From Octopus bimaculoides (lineage: Eukaryota), in NCBI RefSeq assembly GCF_001194135.2, contig NC_069002.1, positions 8,195,924 to 8,259,923 of the forward strand: a DNA stretch of 64,000 nucleotides, read 5' to 3'. Position 1 is the stretch's first letter; every line of letters begins with the position of its first letter. Below the pieces are notes generated by a model that saw only the letters and a program-made list of their open reading frames with translations, was not told the origin of the DNA and did no database searches. Position numbers and translations under genes: made by a program. Below are positions 704 through 35,228 of this stretch, one piece after another.

Positions 704-759
704 AAAACCGTTCTTCACAGTGCTTCAAACACCACGAGACAAGGCGATGGTTACGTAAG
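704..759 (+). CDS. MFSD11: MFSD11 copy A exon 2 ([19 protein letters not shown])
   Basis: ttccag acceptor, AG|gtagat donor; 56 nt, same as copy B exon 2; N-T-T sequon in loop 1. Confidence 0.88.
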
Positions 760-32918: not shown

Positions 32919-35228
32919 CACACACACACACACATAGAAACCATACCAAATCAGCCTGGAATCTGGTGCAATTTCCCAGCTTGCCAGCTCGGGTCAAACT
33001 GTGTGCAACACATACCAGCATGGACAACAGACGTTAAATGATGACGATGACGATGACTACGACGGCGACGACGACGACGATGATGATGATGATGATGATG
33101 ATGATGAAATTTATTAAAATTCTTCATTATTTTTAACAATTAAATGCGTCAAAGAGGAAATAAAAATGTAACAATATAGAAACTTTTGGTTGTCAATATT
33201 CCAAATCAACATTGAATGGTTAATATAGGATTAAATAATTACCCGCTGCTCCAAATCCTACAAGGAATGATCCTAAGTAGAGAGTCCAATATACTGGTTT
33301 CAGGAAGGACATGATAAACAGTCTGGAAAATAAAACATTTAACTAAAATGTAATCGATGAATGAAACTTATAAAATTAAAATAGCCACTGTGGGGCACCT
33401 TGGGCAAGTGTCTTCTTCTATAATCTCAGGATGACCAAGGCCTTGTGAGTGGATTTGGTTGACTGAAATTGAAAGAAGCATGCCATATATATATGCTTGC
33501 AGTCATGTATGCTTGTCAAGAGCAGGGCTCATTAGTCACCAACGGAGCCGCAAATGCAAAATCTAAGTTAGTCCTAGAGCGCACAATGTTCCTGAAGGTA
33601 AGCAACGGTCTTCCTCGGTCACGAGTGGACGGCCATCATACACACATACACACATGTATGTATGTGTGTGTGTGTGTGTGTGTGTGTTTTTCAGTCTGAG
33701 ATATTATCACAGGACAAACACTGCAGTTAATGGCCTATCAATGATGTATATACGTTAAGTATAATACAAAGATGGCTATTTTAATTAAATACTGAGTCAA
33801 TTGTGTATACTGAACCTTTTAAAATTGTATTTCTTATGATGATGATAATTACGACGGATGATTACGACGGATGATTATGACGATGAAATGAATACATAGT
33901 TATACTCACAGATATGTGACACCAGCCATTATCATTGAGATCTTGGTGCCACACAAGAATATAACAACAGGAGCGATCCAGTTGCAGAGACCGAAGGTTG
34001 CGTAGATAATACCAAGACTAGACAAAAGGAAGAATCAAAAACAAGCATTACACAATAACATTTGACAACAACAGCGACCCCTATTTTCCTTCCATAAAAT
34101 ATCCTACATGTCACCTCGAGTTGCAAGCTGTATGGAGATCTCTCACTATTGTTGATGACACGGAAAACAAAAAGAAACACGTCGTACTCATTATTTAGTG
34201 GTTGGCATCAGGAAGGGCATCCGACCATAGAAACCACGCCAAAGGAGACACTGGAGCATGTTGCAGCTCTCAGACCTCCCTCTGGAATCCTGTCAAATCC
34301 GATGATGAATAAGCAGCATTTACCGCTACTGGTACTCCGTCCGTTACGACGATGAGTGTTCCAGTGGATTCGACCAACGGAACAACCCGCTCATGGAATT
34401 AACGTAAAAGTGGCTGAGTACTCCGTAATTATTCTTGTTAATCTTGGAGGGCCAAAATAGTTGGTCCCCCACTTCCTCTAGACTACCCGAGTAAAAATAA
34501 AATAAAATAAAATTTAAAAAAATAGAAAAGAATCAAGTATAGTTCGACTGTGTGAGGATTTGAACCTACAACAGCGAAGACAAAAATATTTCACGGCACT
34601 TAGTCCAACGCACTACATTTCTTTCTGTTTAATGGCCAAATTGATTACAAGTGATATTAACAAAGAAATTTGTGTCTACCTTACGAAACCATCGCCTTGC
34701 CTCGTGGTGTTTGAAGCACTGTGAAGAACAGTTATCTGGAGGGAATGAAAACAAATAAATAAATAATCAAAAATGAAATTTAAAAACAGTAAAACTTTTT
34801 TATTCTATTGGTGTCTTTTGCCGAACCGCTAAGTTACGGGGACATAAAGGCACCACACCGGTTGGCAAGCAGTGACGGGAGACAAACACACACTTAACGG
34901 TTCGGCGAAAGGAACCGATGGAATAAGTACTAGACATAGCAAAGTATAAAACAAATTATGTGGTAGCGTTGATTCATTCGACTTAAAGATTCTTCGAGGC
35001 GGTGCCCGAGATGGCCGAGAAAAGTAAAAGATAGAAGATAAAAAAGATTAAAATAAATGGAAAAAATTGTTCAATATATAAATAAATAAGGGTCAAATTT
35101 TGTTTTACCTGAACCATGGACGTGGTATGGAATGCTGTGTAGATAAACATGAAGGATAATCCCAAAATTATAACATTATACATGTTTGCGTTACAGAAGC
35201 ATTGAGGCGGCATGTTACCTGGACACAT
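24289..35228 (-). CDS. MFSD11: MFSD11/UNC93-like MFS transporter, copy B (divergent paralog, 435 aa)
   Basis: Complement join 35228-35109,34735-34680,34017-33910,33322-33243,32564-32468,32192-31995,31384-31350,29709-29644,28874-28749,27986-27818,26756-26693,24607-24536,24405-24289 = 1308 nt, open to a TAA. No frameshifts. The start codon choice (35228 vs 35213 or 35264) is uncertain. Confidence 0.88.
24536..24607 (-). CDS. MFSD11: MFSD11 copy B exon 12
   Basis: 72 nt; [24 protein letters not shown]. Confidence 0.9.
26693..26756 (-). CDS. MFSD11: MFSD11 copy B exon 11
   Basis: 64 nt; [21 protein letters not shown]. Confidence 0.93.
27818..27986 (-). CDS. MFSD11: MFSD11 copy B exon 10
   Basis: 169 nt; [43 protein letters not shown]. 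Confidence 0.9.
28749..28874 (-). CDS. MFSD11: MFSD11 copy B exon 9
   Basis: 126 nt; [42 protein letters not shown]. Confidence 0.94.
29025..29231. repeat. Foldback (MITE-like) element in copy B intron 8
   Basis: Nested inverted arms: aacagattctctatag../..ctatagaaaatctgtt, atgtaaacaatgc / gcattgtttacat, gaagatagaaaa / ttttctatcttc. Confidence 0.7.
29644..29709 (-). CDS. MFSD11: MFSD11 copy B exon 8
   Basis: 66 nt; [23 protein letters not shown]. Confidence 0.92.
31350..31384 (-). CDS. MFSD11: MFSD11 copy B exon 7 (35 nt)
   Basis: [11 protein letters not shown]; tttcag / gtgagt. Confidence 0.88.
31750..31921. repeat. (GATA)n/(GACA)n microsatellite
   Basis: Direct inspection; representative of many simple repeats. 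Confidence 0.95.
31995..32192 (-). CDS. MFSD11: MFSD11 copy B exon 6
   Basis: 198 nt; [37 protein letters not shown]... Confidence 0.92.
32468..32564 (-). CDS. MFSD11: MFSD11 copy B exon 5 (GC donor)
   Basis: 97 nt; [33 protein letters not shown]; donor AG|gcaagt. Confidence 0.88.
33243..33322 (-). CDS. MFSD11: MFSD11 copy B exon 4
   Basis: 80 nt; [26 protein letters not shown]. Confidence 0.92.
33910..34017 (-). CDS. MFSD11: MFSD11 copy B exon 3
   Basis: 108 nt; [36 protein letters not shown]. Confidence 0.92.
34680..34735 (-). CDS. MFSD11: MFSD11 copy B exon 2
   Basis: 56 nt; [19 protein letters not shown]; canonical sites. Confidence 0.9.
35109..35228 (-). CDS. MFSD11: MFSD11 copy B exon 1 ([40 protein letters not shown])
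   Basis: Matches the MFSD11 TM1 pattern (NxIILGxxFMFxxTAF); CAG|gtaaaa donor. Confidence 0.88.

What the first reader, a model, noticed from the sequence alone, without database searches (positions are those of the whole stretch)
704..35228. Inverted, tail-to-tail duplicated pair of MFSD11/UNC93-like transporter genes
Seen: two spliced genes on opposite strands with matching exon sizes (56, 108, 80, 97, 213/198, 35, 66, 126, 169, 64, 72, 139) and alignable introns; homology extends at least to A ~12930 / B ~23390. Established: MFSD11 is a poorly characterised MFS transporter, single-copy in human. Inference: this is a lineage-specific local duplication, not allelic redundancy, because the copies differ by many amino acids and carry different TE insertions.
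Basis: partly seen in the sequence, partly recalled or inferred. Interest (0 to 1): 0.75.

Follow-up and report, generated by a model that had tools for sequence, protein, structure and literature searches.

The report
Inverted MFSD11 gene duplicate in octopus
Two head-out, tail-to-tail copies of the orphan membrane transporter gene MFSD11 really do sit side by side in the Octopus bimaculoides genome; both are already annotated, and the second copy is an old, fast-evolving but still intact paralogue, which makes this an ordinary gene duplication.

Summary
The window is Octopus bimaculoides (GCA_001194135.2, CM046622.1). Copy A (+) has exons of 56,108,80,97,213,35,66,126,169,64,72,139 nt at 704-12504. 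Copy B (-) has the same series (198 for 213) at 34735-24267, plus exon 1 at 35228/35213-35109. No gap touches an exon.

Corrections:
- A's exon 1 lies 7.7 kb upstream of the window, and A has a 14th exon at 18044-18214.
- The inverted homology reaches A ~17386 / B ~20669, so the unique spacer is at most 3.2 kb.
- A 7218-7559 is a misplaced B contig.
- A-B adjacency rests on two scaffold gaps.

Both genes are already in RefSeq and UniProt as "UNC93-like protein MFSD11".

The duplication is not recent. dS(A,B)=0.29 against dS(A,O. sinensis)=0.18. A and O. sinensis share 6-9 derived residues where B keeps the ancestral state. So B arose after the Argonauta split but before the O. bimaculoides/O. 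sinensis split. No B-type protein is annotated in any other species.

B evolves fast (omega 0.59 vs 0.14-0.19) and deviates at 28 of 123 near-invariant positions. It still keeps an open frame, no exonic indels and all splice sites, so it has been under selection. Interest is low.

The parts
704..12504 (+). Copy A (canonical MFSD11), exons 2-13: 704-759, 1122-1229, 3006-3085, 3701-3797, 4852-5064, 5970-6004, 6641-6706, 8087-8212, 8501-8669, 9778-9841, 11243-11314, 12366-12504. Exon 1 lies 7.7 kb upstream of the window.
   Evidence: all boundaries AG/GT, ORF open for 408 codons; 100% identical to RefSeq 'UNC93-like protein MFSD11 isoform X1' of O. bimaculoides; exon 1 at L001 10001-10105.
18044..18214 (+). 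Copy A terminal exon 14, inside the unique spacer. In the RefSeq frame it encodes a 57-aa acidic tail with TAA at 18212-18214. Canonical GT-AG splicing from 12504 instead gives ...GRLPLL and a stop at 18049-18051.
24267..35228 (-). Copy B (divergent paralogue), 13 exons: 35228/35213-35109, 34735-34680, 34017-33910, 33322-33243, 32564-32468 (GC donor), 32192-31995, 31384-31350, 29709-29644, 28874-28749, 27986-27818, 26756-26693, 24607-24536, 24405-24267. An in-frame TAA in exon 13 lies 11 codons before the donor.
   Evidence: Identical to RefSeq XP_014776807.1 (435 aa) and XP_052831766.1. Pfam UNC-93 288 bits.
1..17386 (+). Arm A of the inverted repeat. It starts upstream of the window, at about L001 8029. 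The innermost pairing seen is A 17325-17386.
20629..37269 (-). Arm B of the inverted repeat. It runs from the intron-13 remnant (20629-22648, colinear with O. sinensis L003 77407-60356) to about 2 kb upstream of B exon 1. The outer end is a SINE-like element at 37068-37269 that is also present at the same place in A and O. sinensis.
17387..20628 (.). Unique spacer / turn-around. It holds A exon 14 and 1.7 kb of downstream sequence colinear with O. sinensis (to 19916), then SINE-like copies at 19912-20374 and gap 20375-20628.
7218..7559 (+). Misplaced B-type contig inside A intron 8. It is an assembly artefact and really bridges B's gap 29402-29469.
   Evidence: Tandem Repeats Finder sees it as a false 329-nt 'tandem repeat' at 7274-7889.
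32468..32564 (-). B exon 5, the densest loss of near-invariant family residues (WTAQGAFLTNNSNSETM becomes [17 protein letters not shown]). It maps to the C-terminal half of TM4 and the TM4-TM5 loop.

Best explanation
This is an inverted (tail-to-tail) segmental duplication of the whole MFSD11 locus in the octopus lineage.

Extent. The duplicated segment ran from about 2 kb upstream of exon 1 to within a few hundred bases of the last exon. The fold-back point is about 2 kb beyond the gene. Copy A is the conserved orthologue of metazoan MFSD11, an orphan 12-helix MFS-type 'atypical solute carrier'.

Timing. Copy B arose after the Argonauta lineage split off but before O. bimaculoides separated from the O. 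sinensis/O. vulgaris lineage. By synonymous divergence the duplication is about 1.7-1.9 times as deep as that split.

Later changes in B. Its introns became compact (intron 1 is 373 nt, against 8.3 kb in A). It gained a stop about 14 residues short of A's canonical end. Its protein has evolved 3-4 times faster than A's.

Status of B. It has nevertheless been kept as a spliced, translatable gene by purifying selection. It is most likely a sub- or neo-functionalised transporter-like paralogue with a remodelled TM4 / loop 4-5 region, not a dead copy.

Shown: the structure, the homology, the relative age and the selection signatures. Inferred: expression, function, the mechanism of origin and true physical adjacency.
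For: Structure:
- Colinear inverted arms and identical exon architecture.
- Both products pass Pfam UNC-93 and MFS_1.
- Every close database hit is named MFSD11.

Age:
- dS is 0.292 for A-B, 0.178 for A-O. sinensis and 0.313 for B-O. sinensis.
- Branch synonymous changes are A 16, O. sinensis 17, B 45.
- Over 1694 aligned intron sites, d(A,B)=0.204, d(A,Osin)=0.127, d(B,Osin)=0.240.
- Polarised residues: A and O. sinensis share a derived state while B is ancestral at 6 sites (9 under the relaxed rule). The A+B and B+O. sinensis groupings get 1-2 each. All three share a derived state against Argonauta plus outgroups at 12-26 sites.
- B is equidistant from O. sinensis A-type (710 bits) and O. 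bimaculoides A (707 bits).
- Exon 6 is 198 nt in B, O. sinensis and O. vulgaris, so A's 213 nt is derived.

Selection on B:
- Omega is 0.59. It is below 1 (P=0.003) and above that of A plus O. sinensis (Fisher P=2e-4).
- B-lineage indels number 21 in 1796 intron sites but 0 in 989 exon sites. About 15 would be expected in the CDS (P about 3e-7).
- Neutral simulations keep 430 codons open in only 0.1-0.8% of runs.
- All 24 splice sites are usable, with one GT changed to GC.
- The AlphaFold2 model is a confident 12-helix MFS fold (pLDDT 89, pTM 0.87). Its closest solved fold is UNC93B1.

Divergence of B:
- It deviates at 28 of 123 columns that are at least 90% conserved in 106 orthologues. A, O. 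sinensis and Argonauta deviate at 9-10.
Against: - No expression data could be examined.
- B's omega is high and B carries a premature TAA. A history of 'functional for long, recently dead' would fit the same numbers.
- No B-type protein is annotated in O. sinensis, O. vulgaris or Argonauta. A pre-speciation origin therefore requires loss or non-annotation in those species. The syntenic place in O. sinensis and O. vulgaris lies just beyond the fetched loci and could not be read.
- In introns the A and O. sinensis branches are unequal (67 vs 112 unique changes). So the clock is imperfect, or some A-B gene conversion has occurred.
- B and Argonauta are both long branches, so raw quartet counts (28:11:4) are exposed to long-branch attraction.
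- A-B adjacency and orientation rest on scaffold joins across gaps 20375-20628 and 21368-21809. The assembler demonstrably misplaced one B contig into A.
Confidence: 0.65

Rival explanations
1. Copy B is an unprocessed pseudogene: a duplicate that lost function and is decaying. Its RefSeq protein models would then be annotation artefacts.
For: - In-frame TAA in exon 13 and a GT-to-GC change at the exon-5 donor.
- Omega of 0.59, three to four times that of A.
- Nineteen more losses of near-invariant residues than A, including WTAQG to WAALS, GFGDS to GFTDS and EDGAPAF to EDAVAAF.
- No orthologue annotated elsewhere.
- Introns heavily deleted.
Against: - Omega is significantly below 1.
- There are no exonic indels, against about 15 expected.
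- The frame is open for 430 codons, which neutral simulations reach in at most 0.8% of runs.
- All splice sites are retained.
- The stop removes only about 14 C-terminal residues after TM12.

A very recent death cannot be excluded.
Confidence: 0.25
2. The duplication is young and private to O. bimaculoides. B only looks old because every class of its sites evolves about three times faster.
For: - No B-type gene is annotated in O. sinensis, O. vulgaris or Argonauta.
- No inverted copy is seen within 10 kb downstream of the Argonauta gene.
- One or two residues and 11 nucleotide sites group A with B.
- Some intron blocks (A 5866-6164, 7640-7986) are closer between A and B than between A and O. 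sinensis.
Against: - It requires a roughly threefold rate increase at synonymous and intron sites in a copy only a few kb away.
- It requires 6-9 exact reversions to the ancestral residue in B.
- The A-B-similar blocks are better explained by local gene conversion or chimeric assembly next to the misplaced contig.
Confidence: 0.12
3. The tail-to-tail neighbourhood is a scaffolding artefact. B is a genuine paralogue, but it lies elsewhere or in another orientation.
For: - Two gaps (20375-20628, 21368-21809) separate the last A contig from the first long B contig.
- The assembler put a B contig into A's intron 8.
- The chromosome-scale record carries identical sequence and gaps, so it is not an independent check.
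Against: - The small contig 20629-21367 and the start of contig 21810-29401 continue, in the right order and inverted orientation, the intron-13 sequence of the O. sinensis orthologue (L003 77407 back to 60356). This is what a true fold-back predicts.
- The paralogy itself is beyond doubt.
Confidence: 0.1

Closest known systems
MFSD11 (UNC93-like protein MFSD11; human O43934, fly CG18549), an 'atypical SLC' of MFS type
   Same: Copy A is the octopus orthologue. It is 45-57% identical over its full length to MFSD11 of molluscs, annelids, arthropods and vertebrates. It scores 342 bits on Pfam UNC-93. Its exon structure is shared with O. sinensis, O. vulgaris and Argonauta. Copy B is a member of the same family (288 bits). 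The literature describes MFSD11 as an orphan, neuronally expressed, nutrient-responsive putative transporter (PMC5627054, PMC8621210).
   Different: MFSD11 appeared once per species in the database hits I examined. Here there is a second, divergent copy. B lacks 28 of 123 near-invariant residues, is truncated after TM12 and has compact introns.
UNC93B1 / UNC93A (other branches of the UNC-93 family; PDB 7C76, 7C77)
   Same: Same Pfam family and same 12-helix MFS fold. UNC93B1 is the closest solved structure both by sequence (E about 1e-7) and by fold (TM-score 0.74).
   Different: Sequence identity is only about 15%. Neither copy groups with UNC93A or UNC93B, because every close hit is MFSD11. 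The alternative of two ancient subfamilies is therefore rejected.
Inverted segmental duplications / palindromes with a short unique spacer (general genome-structure class)
   Same: There are two arms in opposite orientation, each carrying a complete gene with its upstream region. The spacer is at most 3.2 kb. One tract is nearly identical between the arms, which could be arm-to-arm gene conversion.
   Different: The arms are old and diverged (about 80% identity, with many arm-specific deletions), unlike palindromes that are kept homogenised. The centre is not sequenced through.

Membership tests
UNC-93 family / MFSD11 orthogroup | Significant match to Pfam UNC-93 (PF05978) above the gathering score, over the full profile | tested here: met
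   A scores 342 bits (profile 6-379 of 379) and B 288 bits (6-379 of 379). The cut-off is 22.9.
UNC-93 family / MFSD11 orthogroup | MFS fold with 12 transmembrane helices in two six-helix halves joined by a long cytoplasmic loop | tested here: met
   MFS_1 (PF07690) scores 65.5 bits for A and 47.6 for B. The AlphaFold2 model of B has 12 long helices with a disordered loop at 196-226, pLDDT 89 and pTM 0.87. Top fold matches are UNC93B1 and MFS transporters.
UNC-93 family / MFSD11 orthogroup | Closest relatives are MFSD11, not UNC93A or UNC93B1 | tested here: met
   Almost every named protein among the 120 best hits for either copy is called MFSD11 or a synonym (a few are unnamed 'hypothetical' entries). 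UNC93B1 is matched only at E about 1e-7.
UNC-93 family / MFSD11 orthogroup | Retention of the family's near-invariant residues (123 columns at least 90% conserved in 106 orthologues) | tested here: inconclusive
   A keeps 114 of 123, the same as O. sinensis (114) and Argonauta (113). B keeps only 95 of 123, with 7 losses clustered in TM4 / loop 4-5. A is a full member. B is a divergent member whose activity may have changed.
UNC-93 family / MFSD11 orthogroup | Transport or channel-regulating activity | not testable with these tools
   No substrate is known even for mammalian MFSD11 (PMC5627054).
Inverted segmental duplication (local, tail-to-tail) | Two colinear arms in opposite orientation sharing non-coding as well as coding sequence | tested here: met
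   Introns, the upstream region and the intron-13 remnant all align in inverted order.
Inverted segmental duplication (local, tail-to-tail) | Contiguous sequence through the centre, or an independent assembly, showing the arms are physically adjacent | tested here: inconclusive
   Gaps 20375-20628 and 21368-21809 intervene. The chromosome-level record is the same sequence. Order and orientation of the inner contigs agree with O. sinensis intron 13.
Processed pseudogene / retrocopy | Absence of introns, with a poly(A) remnant | tested here: not met
   B has all 12 introns at the same positions and phases as A.
Haplotig / allelic redundancy | Near-identity of the two copies (allelic level of divergence) | tested here: not met
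   dS is 0.29 and intron divergence 0.20, both larger than between O. bimaculoides and O. sinensis.

The most novel reading that the evidence does not exclude
Copy B is a neo-functionalised MFSD11 paralogue. It was retained by selection in the O. bimaculoides lineage but lost from O. sinensis and O. vulgaris. Its TM4 / loop 4-5 (the WTAQG..LTxNS motif) and TM9 entry were remodelled under positive selection, giving a transporter with new substrate or gating properties. It would be a natural experiment on which residues matter in an orphan solute carrier.
Probability: 0.2. Interest if true: 0.4.

Novelty: new member of a known kind. Interest (0 to 1): 0.2.

Why it matters
It matters only modestly. 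MFSD11 is an orphan transporter that appeared once per species in the database hits I examined. A second copy kept by selection, with a concentrated rewrite of otherwise near-invariant TM4 / loop 4-5 residues, points to positions worth mutating when someone looks for the substrate or gating mechanism. For genome curators there are three practical points. A B contig is misplaced in A's intron 8. The annotated exon 13/14 junction of copy A needs a non-canonical splice site. The locus is a case where paralogy confused the scaffolder. As evolutionary biology it is a routine duplicate-gene story, and both genes are already in the public annotation.

Tried and rejected
- An 80-aa two-exon query to the protein database returned only unrelated short fragments. 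I dropped it in favour of full-length queries.
- A human MFSD11 sequence written from memory was used only as a tblastn guide to find exons. All conclusions rest on Pfam and database hits instead.
- I first read the lack of minus-strand MFSD11 exons in the O. sinensis and O. vulgaris loci as absence of B. I withdrew this when the DNA map showed those loci end where window 19916 maps, short of B's position.
- I tried to step further along the O. sinensis chromosome through a neighbouring gene. No gene is called within 10 kb upstream of B, and the rest of the window shows only low-complexity ORFs. The second O. vulgaris entry is just an isoform.
- Argonauta is saturated at synonymous sites (pS about 0.76), so third-position quartets carry no rooting signal. 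I replaced them with doubly polarised amino-acid states.
- A Kyte-Doolittle hydropathy scan was too coarse for helix boundaries. I replaced it with the AlphaFold2 model.
- tRNA and Rfam scans of the window found nothing.
- A three-way test of the near-identical A/B tract in intron 8 failed, because O. sinensis does not align there.
- Literature searches found no paper on MFSD11 duplication in cephalopods.
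Full report
WHAT IS THERE

The window is Octopus bimaculoides. It is identical, gaps included, to GCA_001194135.2 CM046622.1, with window position 1 equal to L001 17711. A self-comparison shows a colinear inverted chain between A (641-12924, + strand) and B (34794-23393, - strand) in blocks of 68-90% identity.

I rebuilt both gene models from splice sites and reading frames. All have AG/GT boundaries, and together they give one open frame of 408 codons. Copy B has the same series, with 198 in place of 213, plus a first coding exon at 35213-35109.

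Both products match Pfam UNC-93 over the whole profile (342 and 288 bits) and also MFS_1. Copy A is 100% identical to the RefSeq protein 'UNC93-like protein MFSD11 isoform X1' of O. bimaculoides. Copy B is identical to XP_014776807.1 and XP_052831766.1 and to UniProt A0A0L8GZA5. Both genes are therefore already annotated.

GAPS

No gap touches an exon. The gap-free orthologous loci of O. sinensis (L003), O. vulgaris (L004) and Argonauta hians (L002) carry the same 13 exons one for one, so nothing is hidden in a gap.

- The flanks of gaps 1077-1086, 4203-4451 and 16573-16582 are colinear with O. sinensis. So are the flanks of gap 21368-21809.
- The two gaps at 7031-7217 and 7560-7569 enclose a 342-nt contig that is B-type sequence. 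It is 100% identical to both flanks of B's own gap at 29402-29469 and carries B's indel state. It is a misplaced contig. Tandem Repeats Finder reports it as a spurious 329-nt repeat.
- Just after it, A 7640-7986 is 96-100% identical to B and then drops to 85% at exon 9. This is either a gene-conversion tract or a chimeric contig. O. sinensis does not align there, so I could not decide.
- Gap 20375-20628 lies at the turn-around between the arms and cannot be tested.

CORRECTIONS TO THE ANATOMY

- A's exon 1 lies 7.7 kb upstream of the window (L001 10001-10105).
- A has a further exon at 18044-18214.
- The inverted homology does not stop at A ~12930 / B ~23390. B-side sequence 22648-20629 continues colinearly, in inverted orientation, with O. 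sinensis intron 13 (L003 60356 to 77407), and A 17325-17386 pairs with 20732-20669.
- The unique spacer is therefore at most about 3.2 kb (17387-20628). It holds A's exon 14, then 1.7 kb that is colinear with O. sinensis downstream sequence, then SINE-like copies and the gap.
- A B copy of exon 14 is not visible, but the place where it would lie coincides with that gap. Its absence is not established.
- On the outer side, homology runs to about 2 kb upstream of exon 1. It ends at a SINE-like element found at the same position in A, B and O. sinensis. Beyond that, A is unsequenced.
- B's introns are compact. Intron 1 is 373 nt, against 8.3 kb in A and 18.9 kb in O. sinensis.
- Physical adjacency of the arms rests on scaffold joins over two gaps. 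The order and orientation of the inner contigs are nonetheless what a true fold-back predicts.

AGE

Pairwise Nei-Gojobori estimates over exons 1-13:

| Pair | dS | dN |
|---|---|---|
| A-B | 0.292 | 0.138 |
| A-O. sinensis | 0.178 | 0.034 |
| B-O. sinensis | 0.313 | 0.138 |

- Codon-level branch counts give synonymous changes of 16 (A), 17 (O. sinensis) and 45 (B). Under a clock this puts the duplication about 1.7-1.9 times deeper than the species split.
- Over 1694 aligned intron sites, d(A,B)=0.204, d(A,Osin)=0.127 and d(B,Osin)=0.240.
- Argonauta is saturated at synonymous sites, and both B and Argonauta are long branches. I therefore polarised amino-acid states with two outgroups, requiring that the Argonauta state also be present in a decapodiform or another mollusc.
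- On that test, A and O. sinensis share a derived residue while B keeps the ancestral one at 6 sites (9 under the relaxed rule). Each alternative grouping gets 1-2. All three share derived states at 12-26 sites.
- With B as query, the best non-self hits are O. sinensis A-type (710 bits) and O. bimaculoides A (707 bits), that is, equidistant. Argonauta follows.
- Exon 6 is 198 nt in B, O. sinensis and O. vulgaris, so A's 213 nt is a derived 15-nt tandem insertion.

The best tree is (Argonauta,(B,(A,O. sinensis/vulgaris))). The duplication is octopod-specific but older than the O. bimaculoides / O. sinensis split.

Consequently B must have been lost, or left unannotated, in O. sinensis and O. 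vulgaris. No B-type protein exists for any other species in the database. The syntenic spot lies just beyond the loci I could fetch. Caveats: the A and O. sinensis intron branches are unequal (67 vs 112 unique changes), and some intron blocks are more similar between A and B than between A and O. sinensis. Both hint at some arm-to-arm conversion.

IS B ALIVE?

B's branch has 45 synonymous and 91 non-synonymous changes, giving omega 0.59. This is significantly below 1 (P=0.003) and significantly above A plus O. sinensis (omega 0.14-0.19; Fisher P=2e-4).

Evidence that B has been maintained:
- B-lineage indels number 21 in 1796 aligned intron sites but none in 989 exon sites. About 15 would be expected across the CDS (P about 3e-7).
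- Random substitution at the observed density leaves 430 codons open in only 0.1-0.8% of simulations.
- All 24 splice dinucleotides remain usable. One GT became GC.
- B's single stop (TGG to TAA, ...FFSLK*) lies after TM12.
- Canonical splicing of A gives ...GRLPLL*. This is also how the O. vulgaris annotation ends. On that reading, B is only about 14 residues shorter than A.
- An AlphaFold2 model of B is a confident 12-helix MFS fold (pLDDT 89, pTM 0.87). Its nearest solved folds are UNC93B1 and then generic MFS transporters.

Evidence of divergence:
- B deviates at 28 of 123 columns that are at least 90% conserved in 106 metazoan orthologues. A, O. sinensis and Argonauta deviate at 9-10.
- Seven of these losses cluster in the WTAQG..LTxNS stretch of exon 5, which is the C-terminal half of TM4 and the TM4-TM5 loop.
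- Exons 5 and 12 are the most diverged.
- One 30-codon window has 12 non-synonymous and no synonymous changes. This is a weak hint of positive selection.

The most likely reading is a maintained but functionally shifted paralogue. A recently dead pseudogene is the main rival.

COMPARISON WITH WHAT IS KNOWN, AND VERDICT

MFSD11 is a conserved orphan 'atypical SLC' studied in mouse and fly (PMC5627054, PMC8621210). I found no paper on a cephalopod duplication. Copy A is a plain orthologue. Copy B is a new, divergent member of the same family.

The haplotig and retrocopy alternatives are excluded.

This is a genuine but ordinary duplicate-gene locus that is already annotated. Its main added value is the dating, the evidence that B is under selection, the map of B's altered residues, and three curation notes: the misplaced contig, the non-canonical exon 13/14 junction in the RefSeq model, and the scaffold-only adjacency. 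Interest is about 0.2.

Noticed in passing
window 7218-7559 (and B gap 29402-29469): A small contig bounded by two gaps inside A's intron 8 is B-type sequence. It is 100% identical to both flanks of B's gap and bridges that gap, so the scaffolder put a B contig into A. It creates a false 329-nt 'tandem repeat' at 7274-7889.
   Followed up: yes
window 7640-7986 vs 29540-29196: A tract of about 350 nt in intron 8 is 96-100% identical between A and B and falls abruptly to about 85% at exon 9. Elsewhere the arms are 68-90% identical. This is either arm-to-arm gene conversion or a chimeric contig. O. sinensis does not align there, so it is undecided.
   Followed up: partly
window 12504/12505 and 18042-18051: The RefSeq junction ...GRLPR|YYEML..., which puts a 57-aa acidic tail in frame, needs a non-canonical AA...AG (or TA...CA) intron in both O. 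bimaculoides and O. sinensis. Canonical GT-AG splicing gives ...GRLPLL*, and that is how the O. vulgaris annotation ends. O. sinensis isoform X1 has extra sequence between exons 13 and 14 that puts the tail in frame.
   Followed up: partly
window 5030-5064 (A exon 6): A's exon 6 carries a 15-nt tandem duplication (PSSDE repeated: VEPSSDEPSSD). It is absent from B, O. sinensis, O. vulgaris and Argonauta, which explains the 213 vs 198 nt difference.
   Followed up: yes
window 5436-5843 and 16458-16890: Two copies of one multi-copy element (5532-5839 vs 16583-16890, 92.6% identical, direct orientation) lie in A's introns 6 and 13. The first is absent from the orthologous site in O. sinensis and from B, so it is a recent A-side insertion.
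   Followed up: partly
window 14360-14556, 19912-20374, 21810-22084, 37066-37269, 55725-55945, 56697-56934: A SINE-like element family occurs with dozens of copies in the 92-kb O. sinensis locus. Copies abut both the inner and the outer end of arm B. This could hint at repeat-mediated rearrangement, but the family is so dense that chance adjacency is likely. No tRNA or Rfam match was found.
   Followed up: partly
L003 / L004 vs window 409-19916: The orthologous MFSD11 locus is about three times larger in O. sinensis and O. vulgaris (CDS span about 72 kb) than in O. bimaculoides (about 26 kb). Several of the extra stretches match the multi-copy element families. O. sinensis and O. vulgaris differ by only 3 substitutions in 1314 coding nt (dS 0.007).
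   Followed up: partly
window 21304-21367, 38143-38195, 39387-39447, 42460-42640, 40728-40807: Several assembly gaps are flanked by (TG)n, (CA)n or (AT)n microsatellites, so these gaps probably reflect unresolvable simple repeats, not missing unique sequence.
   Followed up: no
window 44673-45107: A minisatellite with a 42-nt unit (about 10 copies, with higher-order periods of 128 and 210 nt) creates a spurious 181-aa ORF with repeated 'CCIDKYVAMWTLPF' motifs.
   Followed up: no
window 35500-64000: No gene is called within 10 kb upstream of B, and no convincing coding ORF is seen in the remaining 28 kb of the window. This part looks gene-poor and repeat-rich.
   Followed up: partly
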